Positions 4,601 through 21,300 of a DNA stretch of 64,000 bases are shown here, piece after piece (within the stretch, counting starts at the first letter, position 1; each line of letters begins with the position of its first letter). Origin of the DNA: Bugula neritina (Eukaryota > Animalia > Bryozoa); NCBI GenBank assembly GCA_964035545.1, contig OZ037765.1, positions 27,899,504 to 27,963,503 on the forward strand. Direction: 5' to 3'. The notes below the pieces were generated by a model. The model saw only the letters and a program-made list of their open reading frames with translations. It ran no database searches and had not been told where the DNA came from. A program made the translations under genes and the position numbers.

Positions 4601-7600
4601 GTAAACACGAGATCAGTGGGTGGAGTCCAACCACTGTTGGTGATGTTAGGGAGAGCATCCAGATATAATTGTTCCTGTACCTTATTAGAAGTCCTTAGCC
4701 TCTTTAAAAATGGGTTCTCACATGGGTAGTGACTATAAACTTATGTAAGTGTTTATTATCTCCATGATGTGCTGTAGGAGAAGCTCCCTAAAAATCCTCT
4801 CCTCCTTATAGTCCCCCACGTCTCCTTGCACCAACACGGTATGTTGCCTATAAAAAATCGTAGAGCAAAGCTTTGGAATACGCAGTTGGCAAATTTGGCA
4901 AAAGTGGTGATGGTTCCAGCACCTACTATACCCAAGTCTAGAGATAAGTGGGAGTGTTTCGATGCTATGGTAGGAGCTGTAAGAAATACTATAGCAGAAG
5001 TAAGTGCTTGAGCTCCATCAATTTTTTGTAATGATTTATAAGCAATGTTTGATGTAGTGTATTAAAGAGCAACTACTTATGTAAAGGTAGGATTGTGTAA
5101 GAACAAAGTTTATGTTGTGTTTTATGTTAGAGAAATAAATGTTTATTATAGCAGACTTAAAGGAAAGCAATGTGTAAAAAAGGTTATCTCATGAGTTATA
5201 AGTTGCAAGTACAAGTGTGAGATACAAGTCTGGATAAGTGAAAAACGGCTGGGTTTTTATAGTAATAAAAAAGTTAGCTTTTGTGTATTAGCTATAATGA
5301 AAGTGGAAAAGCATGATATGATATGTGAAAAGCTATCATGTATTGGGGGGGAAGCTTTTTCAGCTTATGTAAAGTCCCAACAGTTTAAGACTTCTACTCT
5401 ACAGGACAAACTTCAGACTAAACAAAAATATATTTCCATAAACTCTGTTGAAGGGGCAACTCTGGCAATGTTCAAAAAAGCACTTTTTATAATCATATTC
5501 TAATGATGCAGCTTACGTGTGTGATATTCATATTATGCTTGACTAGAAAGCAATAAAGAGCTCTACCCTTAGGAAAAGTAGCCATTTTAGGAAGGCTTTC
5601 ATGACAGTACCAATGATCCTACTCTCACATGAACCATTTGAATTTGGGTGTTTCCAATTTATGATGCCTTTTTAAAAGCATGCTGATGCGCATGTGTGCA
5701 TGTTGTTAATGTATACCGTGTTATATATCTGAATTATAGAATAAAGAACTGTATCCAAACAAACCAATTATATTGATGGGTTGGAACTTTGGTGCTCTTC
5801 TCTCTATATATGTAAGTGATAGTAACGCTTTTTTGTTTAATATATAGCAGTTTCTACTTTTTCAATTCACATCTCTTATTATGACTTTATATGCCTAACA
5901 GTTGTTTTAGTAAAATTTTAGCATTTTTTATTTTAGCAAATCTCTATTAGATTTTCCTACAATAAACAATACATTGTTGGTTATTTTAGTAGTATGATAG
6001 ATTTTAGTATTCTATAATTTCTACCACATCATATCGCATTAATCTGATTTGAATTTTTTTAGTTCAAGTTAGAGGGAATCAGTAATTAATAGAATACTGA
6101 ATAAATAGTTACATTTGGTGGTTTTGGATCAGTGAATTGAATGCTAAAACACACAAATGTACTTCCTTGTATATTCAAAAACATTTTGTACGTCTCACTT
6201 CTCATATAGATTGGCTCCATGGAGAAAATCTCAGCAGTGGTAGCAATGGGGTATCCTATCATGGGTGTGAATGGGCTGAGAGGGGTAAGTTGAAGCTTTC
6301 ACTTGGTATAGCTATCAACTCTAACAGTTTTGAAATTTTTTTAATATCAATTGATTTTTTTACTATTACTCCAAATGTTTTATCACTTATTTCAGGATGC
6401 TGATGACGTTATTATGGATTCCATAACCCCCACATTGTTTGTTATTGGAGAACATGCCCAGACTTGTCCCATTGCTGACTTGGAGAATATGAGAGAAAAG
6501 ATGAGAGCCAAAAATCATTTAGTGGTTGTGGCTGGTGCTAATGACCACTTGAATGTTAATTTCAAGACTAAGAAGGAGCACAGCCTCACGCAGAGTGTTG
6601 TTGATAGATGTATCCTGGTGAGATGCTTTCTATTGTACCAGTTACCTTTTGTCTCTTTGCAAACTCCAAACCTCTACTTCCTGCTTCTACATGTTACACT
6701 GGCTAAGGTTATGCAATGCAAAGATTTGTGATACTAAAATAAATACTTGCCAATTTTATTGCCAGCTTTTAAATTAATTCAATAAATTTATGGAAGCATG
6801 CTAATTGCATTTTTCTTTTATAACATACCTTATGCTATGTGAACTTATAATCTGCATAATATTATTCATTCATTCATCATCATTAGCTGTCCTTCGTGTC
6901 CGAAGATGACTTCCGGTGAATCATGGTCCTCCATTTACATCTGTCTTTGCTGAGAGATTGCCAGCTACCAATAGGGATCCTCAGGTCTTTTAGATTGCGT
7001 TTAACGGTATCTTTGAATCTCAGTCGCGGCCTGCCAACACCACGGGTGCCTTCTTTCAGTTGTGAATAGAGAATTTGTTTAGGTAATCTAGAGTTATCCA
7101 TTCGATGCACATGACCAGCCCATCTCAGGTTTTTTTGAATGAGTAGTTCATACATGCTGGGTAGATTTGCCTGTGCTAGAGTCTCCTCATTCGAGATGAA
7201 ATCCCACCACTTCACGTTCAAGATCTGGCGTAGATGTCTCATCATATAGGTGTTGAATTTGTGAGCGGCTATCCTGTATACAGGCCAGGCCTCCGCTCCA
7301 TAGAGCAGAGAGGACAGGACAATGGCTCTGTACACTGTACACTTGGTCTTGAATGACAGATCCTTATTGTACCACACTTTGGTCTTTAGTCTGCCGAATG
7401 AGATTGAAGCATTGGACATCCTTGTATGAATCTCTTCATCCATCTTGTTGTTGCACATCACTGTAGACCCAAGATATTTAAACTTATTGACGTTGGCAAG
7501 GTCTTCATTATCTATGCAGATACTGTCACCACTGTCATGGGCTCCAGGTGCCGGTTGGTAGAGCGTTTCCGTTTTCTTGATATTGATCTTCAGACCAAAA

Positions 7601-10600
7601 GCTTTGGAAGCTCTGGCGAATCTGTCGACTAATTCCTGTGCATCGCCAATTGCTGTGTGCAACGAAGGCAGTGTCGTCAGCAAACATGAGTTCTCTAACC
7701 AATACTTTCTGTGTTCTTGTTGTTGACTTGTATTGGTTCACATTGAACAGATCAGCTCCAGGTCTACTTTGAATCCAGACGCCTTTATCACAGTTCTCAA
7801 ATGCGTGCTGTAGAACAGCCGATAAGAAAATAGAGAATAGCGTTGGAGCCAACACACATCCTTGTTTCACACCATTGTTGACCTGGAACGACTCAGATAA
7901 CTCCTCCTTCAGCTTGACTGAGGCCTTCATGCCAGTATGGAGAGCGCTGATAAGATTGGTGAAGTGACTGGGAAAACCGAGTTTCTGTAAGATCTTCCAC
8001 AGGGTCGCCCGATCAACAGTATCGAACGCTTTGGTGAAGTCAATGAAGACCATGTACAGGGGCATATTTTGCTCGATGCATTTTTCCTGTATCTGCTTCA
8101 GTGCAAATATCATGTCTGCTGTTCCCCTTCCACTACGGAATCCACACTGAGTTTCGGGTAGGAAGTTTTCTGCATATGATGTCAGTCTATTTAGAAGGAC
8201 ACGAGCAAAAATTTTACCGGGAATTGAGAGCAGGGAGATACCTCTGTAGTTACCGCACAGCTTCCGATCACCCTTTTTGAAGATGGTTATAAGTTGGGCA
8301 TCTTTCCAATCTTGAGGGACTACAGCAGTTTTCCATGTCTCCTTTATTATCTCATGGAGAGTACTTATTAGTTTGGGCCCTCCCCTTTTGATAACCTCAG
8401 GGTGAATACCATCAGAGCCAGGTGATTTCCCTTCACTTAGCATCGAAGTTGCCTTGATCTCTTCAATATCTGGGCAATCGTCCATCCAGTCCTGAATGGG
8501 AGCTTGTCTCAGGTTCTCAATGATGTTGTCATCAATATCTGGAGTCTCGTTTAGTAGCTTGCTGAAATGCTCTGTCCATCTCGCTAGAAGATCTTGTTTT
8601 TCTGTCAGGAGTGTTGAGCTGTCACTGGCCAGGAGCTGGTCAGGATGACTCACTCTTGGACCCCAAACAGTTTTCGTGCTTTGGTAAAAGCCTTTCATGT
8701 CGTTAGTGTCAGCAAACCGTTGCAGTTCAGCAGCTTTTGCCAACCACCAGTCGTTCTTGAGCTCCCTGCATCTTCCTGTGAGTTTTCTGCCAGCCATTCT
8801 AAGCTTTGACTTGTTCGAGCGAGTATTCCTGGTTAACATGTCTGCTCTGGCGTTGTTTCTCTTCTGGATGAGTTCTTGAAGCTCATCATTATTCTCGTCA
8901 AACCAGTCCTCATGCTTCCTGCTGACAGTGCCGAGGTGCACTTTTGACTCTGCATAAACTATCTCTTTGAATGCTCTCCACTTATTCTCTACGCCCTCTG
9001 GAGCAGAGTTCAGTTTCCCAGCAAGGGACTTTTCCAGTTCTTGTCTTACTTCCTCATTCTTAAGTCGAGAAACGTCCAGCTTCTGGCAAGGTGTTCTCCC
9101 TTTCTTCATTTTTCTCCTCACTCTGAGCTTAGCTTTTGACCTGATCATGATGTGGTCAGTACTGCAATTCGCCCCTCTCATCGCCCTTGTGTCCAGAATG
9201 TCTGGTAGATCACATTGTCGTGTGATAACAAAGTCGATGAGATGCCAGTTCTTGCTTCTCGGGTGCATCCAAGAAAACTTGTGAGCTGGTTTATGCTTGA
9301 AGAAGGTGTTGGTAATGCACAGTTGATGTTCACTACAGACTGAGATCAGAAGTTCACCATTGGAGTTCAGGTTTCCGCAGCCATACTTGCCTATCACACC
9401 GGGCCAGGTTGAGTGATCTTGTCCAACCCTAGCATTGAAGTCCCCCATGAGTAAGATCTTATCAGCTGCTGGGACTGATCTTAGAGCCTGATTCAGTTGG
9501 TCATAGAATCTGTTGATGTTTTCTTGGCTGTTTGTCATCGTGGGAGCATAGACAGCTATCACAGTGCACCATCGCTCATCAGACAGAGGAACCCTGAGTG
9601 ACATCAGTCTGTCGCTTATAGCCTTTGGCTCTTCGATTAGTCTCGAAACAAGTTCGTTCCTGATAGCAAGAGCCACGCCTGACTCACTGCGCTCAGATGC
9701 AGTTTTGCCACTCCAATAAATGGTGTAGCCTGACTCTTCACGAATGTTACCGGTATCTTTGAATCTGATTTCACTCAGTGCTGCAATGTCGATGCCATAC
9801 TTCTGTAGTTCAGATGAAATGATTGCACTTCTTCTCTCAGGTCTTTCTTTCTGTGTTCTCACGGTCTAGCATTGTTCGTATGTTCCATGATGCAAGGTTG
9901 AGTTTAGAAATTTGGACCTTTTTATCCTGGGCGACGTCCTGCCAGTATGATTTCGTGTTCATTTTTCTTTTCATGATTCAATCGGATTATACTGACAAGA
10001 AGTTTAAGGATACTTAGGGTTTTGTCAGTTGCTTAAGCACCCCTCTCCACTAAAGAAGTACGCTGTGCTGGCAAGGAGTGTCCAGGACGAGCACAGCAGT
10101 TCAGTAGTCGCAGTGACTGGCCGAGTAATTCGCCCTCTCAGAGTGTCACGTTTCTGGATGGATTGTTGTCTGGGTGATCAACCCATAGATCCTCATACTA
10201 TTAGCCTGGGTGTATCTACACCCAGTTACCAGTGGTGACCGCTTGGAGGTTAGTATGAAGTCTTGACTGATGGGAACTTCTCTACAGTACATCATTGCCA
10301 TCAGTCCTTGGATGCTGGGGTCCGTAGTGTAAACTGGTACAGCTCTTGGTTCCATCATCCACCACCACTTCATTCATTCATTCATAGAGCACTAATAATT
10401 GAAGTAACACTTCATAATTGCCCCTTATCTTTTGACTGTTATCATTAGCACTATGTGGGTGATGTTTTCAGTTTCTTGTTTCTATTACTTGGCTTCATTT
10501 ATATAGGATGAAATTCGATCATATTTAGAGAAGATCTTAACCACTCCAAACAATATTTTAATGCCCAAACTTTCGCTCACAGCTTCCATGGAAAAGATTA

Positions 10601-18345: not shown

Positions 18346-21300
18346 ATGCCTTTTGACGAAAATCTTGAGGTAAGCTATAGTGATTTATTGTCCCAGTTTA
18401 TCTAGTAACAAATTGGCTTATTCTGTACATAAATATGTGTATAATATTTTAGTGTCCACTATGTATGGAGCCACTGGATATAGATGATATGAATTTCTAT
18501 CCCTGCACATGTGGTTATCAGATATGCAGATTCTGTTGGCATAGAATACGGACAGATGAGAATTCTCTCTGTCCCGCCTGTCGTAAGGTATGCTGTCTCC
18601 GTGTAGAGATCTTATTTGGAGAGAAAAGTAGTTGGAACATCAATTTGTTCATTTTTGAAGATTTGATATGATTATTTAATGGCTGAAATGTAACCCTCTA
18701 ACAATTGCTATGAATGCGTTGAGTTGCAAACATTGCGCTATGCCATTGGTGTTTGTGCTCAGTTTTCATGTTGTTAAGCTGTAAACGTTTTCACTATTTT
18801 TATAAATAAACTCTATTTATAGCAATACCAAGAGGACCCGGCAGAGTTCAAACCGCTAACGGAAGATGAGTAAGTTCTTACAGCTGTTATCAACTGTAAA
18901 TTTGAACAACCAGGCAATTGAGTTTAGTTTTTAACACAATTGTATGAATTTCTTAAAACTTAGGTTAACGAAGATTAAAAAGGAAAGAAGACAAAAGGAT
19001 GTTGCTAGAAAGCAAAAAGCTGCTGAGAATAGAAGACATTTGGCTAACATCAGGTGAGAAATGATTTGTGAATTCATTTAGTAGTCAGGTAATACATATG
19101 GGGGACTTGGTTGCTGGGTTTGGTGAAATTTTACACTGGTGGGCATCTGCGAGTTGTAAAACAAGACCAAACACCAAGAAAATTGCCTTTCTTAATAGTT
19201 GAGTAGTAGATTGGCTTTGTTTTCTAGTTTTTTCCCACCATTTCTAGAGAGTTCTTACAAGCTGTTAGTTTTCCATTCACTTACTATATGAACTTGTATG
19301 TTGTGATTTGCTGGCTATTATGTCAATTTAAATGGAGATCTATTTCAGTGTTCTGTTGGTAAGTGATTAGCCAAGTAGCTTTAAAAAGTTTACTTGAAGA
19401 AAAGCACCAAATGGCATTATGCTTCATGAACTTTAAATCACCTTTAAATCTAGCTTTCTATTCAAATCTCCAAGTGTCTCTACAGAAAGCAGCATAAAGA
19501 TAAATAAAGTTGTTTGTACTGTTATGTAATTCTGTTATGTAACTATAATAATATTCTAGTAACATCTAATATGTTGAAGTTTACAGATACTAGCTGTAAA
19601 TAGGGAGTTGTCTTCCATACATGTGTCTTGTGATCAAATACACAATCATTTGCATGATTGTTGCAAAGTTGACTCATGGGTGGTTATTGATAGTGAAGTT
19701 TGCTTCTGATTTGAATTCCATAGAATTACCCTTTGAAATGTTGAACAAGTCAACACTCAGTGCCATTTAAACATTAGTTCCAGGAAGTTTATAATTGTAA
19801 GCTTCTGCAAACAATATTCCTTTGCTACAGCATTGATACTTGACAATGTTGGAGCCTGTGATTATGGGGTGGCAATTTTATATACCAGGCTATGCTTTCT
19901 ATTAGATTGATTCAAAAGTACATTCTGTCTAGTTACTAGTACAAATCTACTGTTTTCTCACACTTTTTAGTCCTTGGAAAGCTTGAAACTTGCTAATTTT
20001 TATTGGCATAGTGTTTTGTAAACTGTAAAAATATGTTTTATGTTGTAAAAAGACAAACATTTAAAAAAAAAGCCTATTATTTATCCCAGCAGAATGGAAG
20101 CCTTTACAGTTTACAGGGCACGCTTTTACTCCTTTTTTACCAGATTCATTTTTCTGATGTGTGTATATTTGTTGGTATATTTTACATGTCACAACATTTT
20201 TAAAGGTATTGGAGTGGTAGGTGGGAAAAGTTCCTTTATAGAAATCTTCATTGCTTTAAGGATTAAAAACCTACTGATTAATGTGTAATCCTGTGGTTGA
20301 AAACCTGGAGTACTTCAAGCTGTCTGCAGAACTTGACAAAAATTTTCAAGAATACAATGTGCCGTTACCATGTTTGGTCATGTTTTCTGGTCCCAATAGG
20401 TTATTATTTTGAAAAAGTTCTTCTAAGTTTCGCAATTTTTTTTTAATTTTGTCAACTTGAGATGTTTTATAAAGCTATTGTGATATGCATGCCATGTATT
20501 CTGGTTTATGGTTGTAAATCATTGTAGGTTACCCCCATTTACATATTGAACTGTGTATGTCATGACAGATCAAACTTCTAATATTCTGTTTGCAGGGTTG
20601 TGCAAAAAAATTTAGTGTTTGTTGTGGGACTATCAACGCGGCTAGCAGATACGGAAATGCTTAAACGGCAAGACTATTTTGGGAAATATGGAAAAATTTT
20701 AAAAGTTGTGATAAACTCTAGTACATCATACGCAGGAGCACAGGTGAGAGCATATATATCATCAAAGCTTCCTATTGTATTATAATATATATATAATGTT
20801 TTAGCTCTGGTGGCTCACTTCCTAAGCTGAGTGAGAGCTATCACTCCCACCATTGAGCATTATTCCTATGTGTCCACCTTTAGGTGCTGCAATTATTGTT
20901 GCAATATACAACTGTATACAGCAGTGTATGCAGTAGTTTACACTGTAGTGTATACAGCAGTGTATGCAGTAGTTTACACTGTAGTTTACACTGTAGTGTA
21001 TACTGTAGTGTATACTGTAGTGTATGCAGTAGTTTACACTGTAGTGTATGCAGTAGTGTATACTGTAGTGTATGCAGCAGTTTACACTGTAGTGTATGCA
21101 GTAGTTTACACTGTAGTGTATGCAGTAGTGTATGCAGTAGTTTACACTGTAGTGTATGCAGTAGTGTATGCTGTAGTTTACACTGTAGTGTATACTGTAG
21201 TTTACACAGTAGTGCTAAAATAGAGACTGAGTTGGCATGCTGAAAATGTTTACTGCTATATTTTTTTCTTACTTAAATTTGATGAGCTGTGAAGCTGATT

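What the first reader, a model, noticed from the sequence alone, without database searches (positions are those of the whole stretch)
10191..10366. Complete HDV-like ribozyme defining the 5' end of the RTE retrotransposon
Seen: all elements of the nested double pseudoknot occur in the right order on the element's sense strand. These are a 7-bp P1 with a G1.U wobble, a 10-bp P2 with one G.U, P3 ACC/GGU, L3 UCCAAGC (U20, C21, C22 and G25 equivalents), P1.1 CC/GG, a perfect 8-bp P4, and J4/2 GCUAA with the C75 equivalent at 10204. J1/2 is expanded to ~100 nt and has its own 9-bp stem (GACUGAUGG/CCAUCAGUC). The predicted cut (10367/10366) lies 2 nt inside the TSD, matching a boundary defined independently. 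Known: HDV-like ribozymes process the 5' ends of R2 and some RTE elements. Inference: this family excises itself from read-through transcripts instead of using its own promoter. The GUG repeat allows a second P1 register (AGUGGUG) that uses a flanking base.
Basis: partly seen in the sequence, partly recalled or inferred. Interest (0 to 1): 0.88.

Follow-up and report, generated by a model that had tools for sequence, protein, structure and literature searches.

The report
HDV-like ribozyme heading an RTE retrotransposon
The first ~179 bases of a 3.5-kb RTE-type jumping gene fold into a hepatitis-delta-type self-cutting RNA that most likely trims the element's transcript to its exact 5' end; it is well supported by comparison, but it is a new example of a mechanism already known for this class of elements.

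Summary
A generic HDV descriptor finds this site only, in two P1 registers, in the 64-kb window. It finds nothing in 200 shuffles.

Five diverged subfamilies in the same genome and five related elements from other assemblies keep the fold:
- P2 has at least six different sequences that all pair.
- P3 shows one A-U to G-C swap.
- P4 varies in length.
- L3 (UCCNNGN) and J4/2 (GCUAA, with the catalytic C at 10204) are almost invariant.

The best local Rfam hit is drz-agam-1, always below threshold (17-27 bits against a cut-off of 37).

The window's duplication ends at 10372. That register also leaves the two-hairpin J1/2 domain intact. In this copy base 1 is A (A-U instead of G.U) and the ORF is broken.

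No RNA or cleavage data could be obtained. HDV-like ribozymes at RTE 5' ends and structured J1/2 inserts are both published. The scan has already noted this family at two other copies (s1-442905, s1-456977). Verdict: real, a new member of a known kind.

The parts
6878..10369 (-). One copy of a ~3.5-kb RTE-type non-LTR retrotransposon. The 3' limit is ambiguous by ~3 nt because both the tail and the TSD begin with ATG.
   Evidence: 5' homology with ten siblings starts at 10369/10368. 3' homology ends at 6880-6874 with a variable (ATG)n tail.
10372..10385 (-). 5' copy of the 14-nt target-site duplication. GA at 10371-10370 lies between it and the element.
   Evidence: Identical to 6877-6864.
6864..6877 (-). 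3' copy of the target-site duplication.
10363..10369 (-). P1 5' strand in the favoured register (AGUGGUG here, GGUGGUG in 7 of 10 siblings). Predicted cut between 10370 and 10369.
   Evidence: Descriptor hit 10369..10191. Sibling boundaries and TSDs. The J1/2 fold is 4.7 kcal/mol better in this register.
10360..10366 (-). Alternative cut between 10367 and 10366.
   Evidence: Descriptor hit 10366..10191.
10261..10362 (-). J1/2 peripheral domain, 102 nt in the favoured register. Hairpin a closes with 10361-10356 / 10314-10309. Hairpin b closes with 10306-10298 / 10273-10265. The linker AAGA lies before P2.
   Evidence: MFE -28.8 kcal/mol, z = -1.97. The same two-hairpin layout appears with different sequences in other subfamilies.
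10251..10260 (-). P2 5' strand
10248..10250 (-). P3 5' strand (ACC)
10241..10247 (-). L3 (UCCAAGC). C10246 and C10245 form P1.1 with G10229 and G10230.
10238..10240 (-). P3 3' strand (GGU)
10231..10237 (-). P1 3' strand (CACCACU)
10206..10225 (-). P4 hairpin: 8 bp with an AGAU loop.
   Evidence: The four basal pairs are conserved; the distal part varies among relatives.
10201..10205 (-). J4/2 (GCUAA). C10204 is the candidate catalytic cytosine (C75 equivalent).
   Evidence: The C is present in all 14 relatives parsed.
10191..10200 (-). P2 3' strand, which is the 3' end of the ribozyme.
7535..9862 (-). Larger piece of the broken endonuclease plus reverse-transcriptase ORF.
   Evidence: Exo_endo_phos and RVT_1. 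Compared with the intact 1030-aa ORF of L093, this copy has a 4-nt insertion at 9852-9849, a 3-nt deletion at 8458 and a 1-nt insertion at 7649.
6883..7683 (-). C-terminal piece of the same ORF, in another frame.

Best explanation
Window 10369-10191 (minus strand) encodes a large HDV-like (drz-Agam-type) self-cleaving ribozyme. It forms the first ~179 nt of an RTE-type retrotransposon RNA.

Proposed mechanism: when the element is transcribed as part of a longer RNA, the 5'-terminal GGU repeat pairs with CACCACU about 130 nt downstream to form P1. P2, P3, P1.1 and P4 complete the nested double pseudoknot. The cytosine of J4/2 (10204) catalyses cleavage just 5' of the first P1 base. This releases an element RNA whose 5' end is the element's first base.

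A two-hairpin J1/2 domain holds P1 and P2 together and favours the register that cuts at 10370/10369.

What is shown: the fold, its covariation, its conservation, and its coincidence with the element's 5' boundary. What is inferred: catalysis, the exact cut and the read-through origin of the transcript.

This particular copy is coding-dead and has A instead of G at base 1.
For: 1. All HDV elements occur in the right order at the stated coordinates. They are unique in the window and absent from 200 shuffles.
2. Covariation. 7 of 10 P2 pairs change on both sides in alignment A1, with 92.8% of cells paired against 30-50% when the partners are slid. In alignment A3, 8 pairs change on both sides, including P3 A-U to G-C in L103, and 0 of 500 shuffles reach this. 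Six different P2 sequences all pair over 8-10 bp.
3. L3 (UCCNNGN) and J4/2 (GCUAA, rarely GCCAA or GCUGA) are conserved. J1/2 sequence and P4 length diverge.
4. The same fold heads related elements at 65-83% protein identity from other assemblies: L095, L096, L097, L101 and L103. The Logan contig L103 is one whole element, running from T + (GGT)3GG to the (ATG)n tail.
5. The top local Rfam hit is drz-agam-1 in three diverged members: 23.1, 27.0 and 17.4 bits.
6. The first P1 base coincides with the element's 5' boundary as defined by TSDs in five siblings.
7. The predicted J1/2 fold is 4.7 kcal/mol more stable when P1 uses bases 1-7 than when it uses bases 4-10.
8. HDV-like ribozymes at RTE 5' ends and structured J1/2 domains are published (PMC3774820; PMC6765202; PMC4908430).
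Against:
- No Rfam family reaches its gathering score. The hit disappears in the whole-window E-value scan and in a whole-genome scan with RF01787.
- P1 and the four basal P4 pairs never covary, so they are supported only by conservation.
- In the favoured register this copy has an A-U pair, not the usual G.U, at the cleavage site. Three relatives have G-C there.
- More distant RTE relatives at 47-53% identity (L098-L100) show no such motif.
Confidence: 0.85

Rival explanations
1. Same ribozyme, but the operative cut is the reader's, 10367/10366 (P1 = 10366-10360 with the G.U wobble), at least in this copy.
For: In this copy only this register gives the canonical G.U closing pair. The descriptor accepts both registers. 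One family-4 copy (L070) starts with only two GGT repeats, as expected after a cut in this register.
Against: RNA cut here would lose the first three bases. Yet all ten siblings keep [G/A]GT in front, and TSDs end just before it. Three GGT repeats are also kept in L095, L096, L097, L103 and L071. This register removes 2 bp of J1/2 hairpin a, costing a predicted 4.7 kcal/mol.
Confidence: 0.2
2. The region is a conserved structured 5' UTR, for example a binding site for the element's protein or a translation-initiation structure. It looks HDV-like but does not cleave. The 5' end would then come from a transcription start at the GGT repeat.
For: Covariation proves structure, not catalysis. The 5' UTR downstream of the ribozyme is also strongly conserved. 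HDV-like folds in R2 are reported to serve protein binding and translation as well (PMC6765202).
Against: The unpaired positions that matter only for catalysis are the most conserved letters: the C of J4/2, UCC..G of L3 and the P1.1 pairs. Old degenerate copies lose them (L013, L067). The first P1 base coincides with the element's first base.
Confidence: 0.1
3. The HDV-like arrangement is a chance match.
For: Rfam scores are below threshold.
Against: 0 descriptor hits in 200 shuffled windows. The fold shows compensatory changes and is conserved across subfamilies and assemblies.
Confidence: 0.01

Closest known systems
drz-Agam-1 (Rfam RF01787), the HDV-like ribozyme of Anopheles gambiae
   Same: Best Rfam match in three diverged members. 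The ACC-UCCNCGU-GGU P3/L3 core, the CUAA junction and the order of P2, P3 and P4 are the same.
   Different: Scores are 17-27 bits against a cut-off of 37. The model's 5' 12 positions (P1 and a short J1/2) do not align, because here P1 lies ~100 nt upstream across a structured insert. The P1 sequence is unrelated.
drz-Agam-2-1 and other large HDV-like ribozymes with a structured J1/2 (P1.2) domain
   Same: A long, stably folded J1/2 insert between P1 and P2. Such inserts are reported to speed cleavage by bringing P1 and P2 together (PMC4908430). The association of drz-Agam-2 with RTE elements is from my memory of Ruminski et al. 2011, which is not held in the library.
   Different: Here J1/2 appears to be two hairpins, not one P1.2 helix. 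There is no detectable sequence similarity, since no Rfam hit to drz-Agam-2-2 appeared. P1 is built from a GGU repeat.
R2 element 5' ribozyme (~184 nt)
   Same: A large HDV-like ribozyme occupying the first ~180 nt of a non-LTR retrotransposon. It processes the element RNA out of a co-transcript (PMC6765202; PMC3774820).
   Different: R2 is site-specific in 28S rDNA, has a different endonuclease type, and in many species cuts upstream in the 28S sequence. This element is dispersed, has an APE-type endonuclease, and its predicted cut is at its own first base.
L1Tc/ingi Pr77 HDV-like ribozyme of trypanosomatids
   Same: A 5'-terminal HDV-like ribozyme that releases a LINE RNA from longer transcripts (PMC6765202).
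   Different: A different retrotransposon clade and host, with a compact ribozyme and no large J1/2 domain.

Membership tests
HDV-like self-cleaving ribozymes (structure-defined family) | Nested double pseudoknot with P1, P2, P3, P1.1 and P4 in the canonical order | tested here: met
   Read directly. The descriptor scan finds it once in the window (in two P1 registers) and never in 200 shuffles.
HDV-like self-cleaving ribozymes (structure-defined family) | Catalytic cytosine in J4/2 (C75 equivalent), followed by purine-A before P2 | tested here: met
   GCUAA at 10205-10201. The C is present in all 14 relatives parsed. Its chemistry was not tested.
HDV-like self-cleaving ribozymes (structure-defined family) | 7-nt L3 with U-C-C...G, and a 2-bp P1.1 to the two bases after P1 | tested here: met
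   UCCAAGC with GG. The pattern is UCCNNGN in nearly all relatives, and P1.1 is paired in 92-93% of cells.
HDV-like self-cleaving ribozymes (structure-defined family) | G.U wobble closing P1 at the cleavage site | tested here: inconclusive
In the register that fits the element boundary it is A-U in this copy, G.U in 7 of 10 siblings and G-C in L095, L054 and L013.
HDV-like self-cleaving ribozymes (structure-defined family) | Helices supported by compensatory changes among homologues | tested here: met
   P2 has 7 of 10 pairs changed on both sides. P3 has one such pair. P4 varies in its distal part. P1 and the P4 base are invariant and so uninformative.
HDV-like self-cleaving ribozymes (structure-defined family) | Divalent-ion-dependent self-scission giving a 5'-OH product that starts at the first P1 base | not testable with these tools
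Rfam drz-agam-1 (RF01787) or any other curated HDV-like Rfam family | Score at or above the family's gathering threshold | tested here: not met
   No gathering-level hit. The best local scores are 23.1, 27.0 and 17.4 bits against 37. It works like these ribozymes but is not a member of that sequence family.
RTE clade of non-LTR retrotransposons | Single ~1000-aa ORF with an N-terminal APE-type endonuclease and a reverse transcriptase, and no separate gag-like ORF1 | tested here: met
   Exo_endo_phos plus RVT_1. An intact 1030-aa ORF is present in sibling L093. The 70-codon ORF over the ribozyme is not kept in relatives, by my reading of the sequences printed.
RTE clade of non-LTR retrotransposons | Compact ~3.2-3.5-kb element with a very short 3' UTR ending in a short tandem repeat and not poly(A), flanked by TSDs and frequently 5'-truncated | tested here: met
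   ~3.49 kb with an (ATG)n tail of variable length and 6-14-nt TSDs. There are at least 32 3' ends against 12 5' regions.
RTE clade of non-LTR retrotransposons | RT phylogeny placing it with named RTE references | not tested

The most novel reading that the evidence does not exclude
The ribozyme's substrate strand is itself a (GGU)n microsatellite, so P1 can form in several registers. The two-hairpin J1/2 domain would select the register that keeps three repeats. Slippage between registers, or during copying, would explain why family members start with 2, 3, 4 or more than 30 GGT repeats. It would also make the ribozyme a seed for 5'-terminal GGT microsatellites. That would be a link between ribozyme architecture, 5'-end heterogeneity and microsatellite birth that I did not find described.
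Probability: 0.3. Interest if true: 0.45.

Novelty: new member of a known kind. Interest (0 to 1): 0.3.

Why it matters
This is a well-supported, uncatalogued example of a large HDV-like ribozyme. It has natural covariation data and a structured J1/2 domain, and it lies in an invertebrate genome; other scan notes, which I did not check, suggest a bryozoan. It explains how this young RTE family gets a precise 5' end. It also shows that curated covariance models miss such ribozymes when J1/2 is long. It does not change the known picture of ribozyme-processed non-LTR retrotransposons.

Tried and rejected
- **Rfam, gathering thresholds, whole window:** nothing found.
- **Rfam, E-value scan, whole window:** the HDV-type hit is lost.
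- **RF01787 against the whole genome:** no match. Only 56 of 9113 candidates were scored, and the control rings in 12 bacterial or archaeal genomes, so this is uninformative.
- **Rfam E-value scan of seven external contigs together:** no ribozyme hit. Small local scans did find drz-agam-1.
- **The look-up of sequencing runs:** I therefore did no read laying and have no RNA 5'-end evidence.
- **Ruminski et al. 2011 and Webb et al. 2009:** neither is held in the library. What I say about drz-Agam-2 mapping to RTE elements is from memory.
- **Distant RTE relatives at 47-53% identity (L098-L100):** no HDV-like motif with the strict or the relaxed descriptor. Their contigs may be 5'-incomplete.
- **The 70-75-codon ORF overlapping the ribozyme (10146-10373):** no Pfam hit. 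It stops early in families 2 and 4 and in L095, by my reading. I rejected it as a gene.
- **A at base 1 as a lineage marker:** L001 and L008 are close relatives, but L002 groups with the G-type copy L003. The A is only weak evidence for inheritance of base 1.
- **Neighbouring ORFs, as a test of the read-through idea:** no Pfam hits, so the host-gene context is unresolved.
- **MAFFT alignments A2 and A3:** family 4's P2 and the one-base bulge in L013 and L096 are out of register. The counts therefore understate pairing; handles bulges.
- The first version of my descriptor had a loop-length bug, fixed.

Full report
**1. What is in the sequence**

On the minus strand the region reads, 5' to 3':
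- flank ending in GA (10371-10370);
- AGU-GGU-GGU-GG (10369-10359);
- about 100 nt of J1/2;
- P2 5' strand (10260-10251), P3 ACC (10250-10248), L3 UCCAAGC (10247-10241), P3' GGU (10240-10238);
- P1 3' strand CACCACU (10237-10231);
- GG (10230-10229), which pairs with the two C of L3 to form P1.1, followed by UAA;
- a perfect 8-bp P4 with an AGAU loop (10225-10206);
- J4/2 GCUAA (10205-10201, C at 10204);
- P2 3' strand (10200-10191).

I wrote a generic HDV descriptor with these requirements:
- 3-bp Watson-Crick P3;
- L3 of the form U-Y-C-N-N-G-N;
- 2-bp P1.1;
- P4 of at least 4 bp;
- J4/2 of the form C-N-R-A;
- P2 of at least 6 bp;
- 7-bp P1 within 140 nt upstream.

It hits the 64-kb window only here, in two P1 registers (10369..10191 and 10366..10191). 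It gives 0 hits in 200 dinucleotide shuffles on both strands. A much looser version gives 2 hits in 200. Chance is excluded.

**2. The host element**

The ORF at 7535-9862 (minus strand) carries Exo_endo_phos and RVT_1. The genome (216 Mb, 321 contigs) holds ten near-identical full-length siblings and two copies lacking the first 17-19 nt. It holds at least 32 3' ends, the usual 5'-truncation pattern.

Sibling L093 has one intact 1030-aa ORF that starts about 390 nt from the 5' end. Compared with L093, the window copy has a 4-nt insertion (9852-9849), a 3-nt deletion (8458) and a 1-nt insertion (7649). Its ORF is therefore in pieces.

The element ends in a variable (ATG)n tail directly after the ORF. 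In size, ORF layout and tail it is RTE-type. I could not run a named-reference phylogeny.

**3. Where the element begins**

All ten siblings read [G/A]GT-GGTGGTGG. Seven have G and three, including the window copy, have A.

The target-site duplications are:
- L003, 12 nt: ends just before GGT;
- L004, 10 nt: ends just before GGT;
- L007, 6 nt: ends just before GGT;
- L010, 9 nt: ends just before GGT;
- L008, 11 nt: ends just before AGT;
- L002, 10 nt: may include the AGT by microhomology.

In the window the alignable TSD is 10385-10372 = 6877-6864, with GA left over before base 10369. The element's first base is therefore 10369.

It has the canonical G.U pair in seven siblings and A-U in this copy.

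Three GGT repeats are also the 5' end in relatives from other assemblies: L095, L096, L097 and L103. The Logan contig L103 is one whole element, running from T + (GGT)3GG to the (ATG)n tail.

The persistence of three repeats argues against it as the main cut. One family-4 copy (L070) with two repeats shows it may happen.

**4. Comparative support for the fold**

The same genome holds diverged subfamilies: family 2 (L014, L015, L018, L052/53), family 3 (L054, L067), family 4 (L069-L073) and family 5 (L013, L016, L017, L089). Relatives at 65-83% protein identity were fetched through a protein search and contig look-ups.

All keep the same order of elements:
- P2 occurs in at least six sequence versions that all pair over 8-10 bp.
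- In alignment A1, 7 of 10 P2 pairs change on both sides. 92.8% of cells are paired, against 30-50% when the partners are slid.
- In the core alignment A3, 8 pairs change on both sides and 0 of 500 shuffles reach that. This includes P3 A-U to G-C in L103. 88% of cells are paired, against 22-50% when slid. MAFFT misplaces one gap, so that count is an underestimate.
- P4 keeps its basal CUGG/CCAG and varies from 4 to 8 bp.
- L3 (UCCNNGN), P1.1 and J4/2 are nearly invariant, as expected for a catalytic core. Old copies such as L013 and L067 have lost parts of it.
- P1 is always a GGU repeat against CACCAC[U/C]. The only changes are A to G, which keeps U.G (L096, L103, L073). P1 therefore rests on conservation and position, not on covariation.

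**5. The J1/2 domain**

J1/2 is about 90-105 nt long and its sequence diverges between subfamilies. In most of them it still folds into two hairpins:
- Hairpin a starts 1-2 nt after P1. Here it closes with 10361-10356 / 10314-10309.
- Hairpin b ends 4 nt before P2. Here it closes with 10306-10298 / 10273-10265.

The closing stems differ in sequence between subfamilies, which suggests selection for structure. I did not test this formally.

With P1 on bases 1-7 the domain's predicted energy is 4.7 kcal/mol better than with P1 on bases 4-10, because the latter register removes 2 bp of hairpin a.

Structured J1/2 domains that accelerate cleavage by bringing P1 and P2 together are published for drz-Agam-2-1 (PMC4908430).

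**6. Comparison with curated families**

No Rfam family reaches its threshold. In small local scans the top hit is drz-agam-1 in three diverged members: 23.1 bits in the window, 27.0 in L103 and 17.4 in L097, against a cut-off of 37. L103 also gives a weak HDV-F-prausnitzii hit.

The model aligns P2, P3, L3, P4 and J4/2. It cannot reach P1 across the long insert. The RNA therefore works like these ribozymes but is not a member of that sequence family.

**7. Mechanism and its status**

- Shown: a conserved, covarying HDV-type fold whose first P1 base is the element's first base.
- Inferred from established knowledge of HDV-like ribozymes: C10204-dependent cleavage 5' of base 1, giving a 5'-OH element RNA.
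- Inferred from the literature: RTE and baggins elements lack their own promoters and are released from co-transcripts (PMC6765202). Cleavage at the 5' junction is reported for RTE (PMC3774820).
- Untested here: RNA runs could not be retrieved, and the neighbouring ORFs gave no gene context.

**8. Novelty**

The mechanism, its link to RTE elements and the large J1/2 inserts are all known. The scan had already noted the same family at two other copies, with a 179-nt ribozyme whose cut is the element's first base (s1-442905 and s1-456977). That agrees with the register I derived independently. A literature search for HDV-like ribozymes in bryozoans found nothing relevant.

This is a new member of a known kind. 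The one less ordinary aspect is that P1's substrate strand is a GGU microsatellite. It allows several registers, and it is found expanded at some 5' ends: at least 32 repeats in L069 and a GGT-rich minisatellite in L067.

Noticed in passing
L006, about 45 nt upstream of the element start (G000:C3, near 21377912): Between the TSD and the element's 5' end lies an inverted copy of the element's first ~22 nt plus 5 extra bases. This looks like a snap-back or template switch at the end of reverse transcription.
   Followed up: partly
L073:1400-1500 (G000:C2, near 28036456): In this family-4 copy the first ~100 nt (P1 strand plus J1/2) are present in inverted orientation next to an otherwise normal ribozyme core. 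It resembles the 5' inversions seen in other LINEs.
   Followed up: no
L069 (G000:C9, near 590418) and L067 (G000:C3, near 21917678): The 5'-terminal GGT repeat is expanded to at least 32 units in L069. In L067 it has become a GGT-rich minisatellite. The ribozyme's P1 strand seems to seed microsatellites at element 5' ends.
   Followed up: partly
window 9976-10190 (minus strand) and the matching 5' UTRs of L095-L103: The ~200 nt between the ribozyme and the ORF start contain blocks that are conserved across all subfamilies, and partly even in relatives at 47-53% identity (L098, L099). They include a GGG-loop-CCC hairpin right after P2. This may be a second functional RNA element of the 5' UTR.
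   Followed up: no
window 10146-10373 (minus strand): A 70-75-codon ORF runs through the whole ribozyme in family 1. It stops early in families 2 and 4 and in L095, and it has no Pfam hit. It is probably fortuitous.
   Followed up: partly
L101:55-120: This public metagenome contig carries what looks like an Illumina index-adapter sequence near its start, so that end of the contig may be an assembly artefact.
   Followed up: no
L004/L042 (G000:C8, near 13126500-13130000): About 50 nt of the 5' flank are repeated after the 3' end of this copy, beyond the 10-nt TSD. This is an unusually long or compound target duplication.
   Followed up: no
window 20930-21200 (plus strand): A cluster of sub-threshold microRNA-precursor-like Rfam hits (MIR6217 at 35 bits, mir-BART21 three times) suggests tandem hairpins or a repeat.
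   Followed up: no
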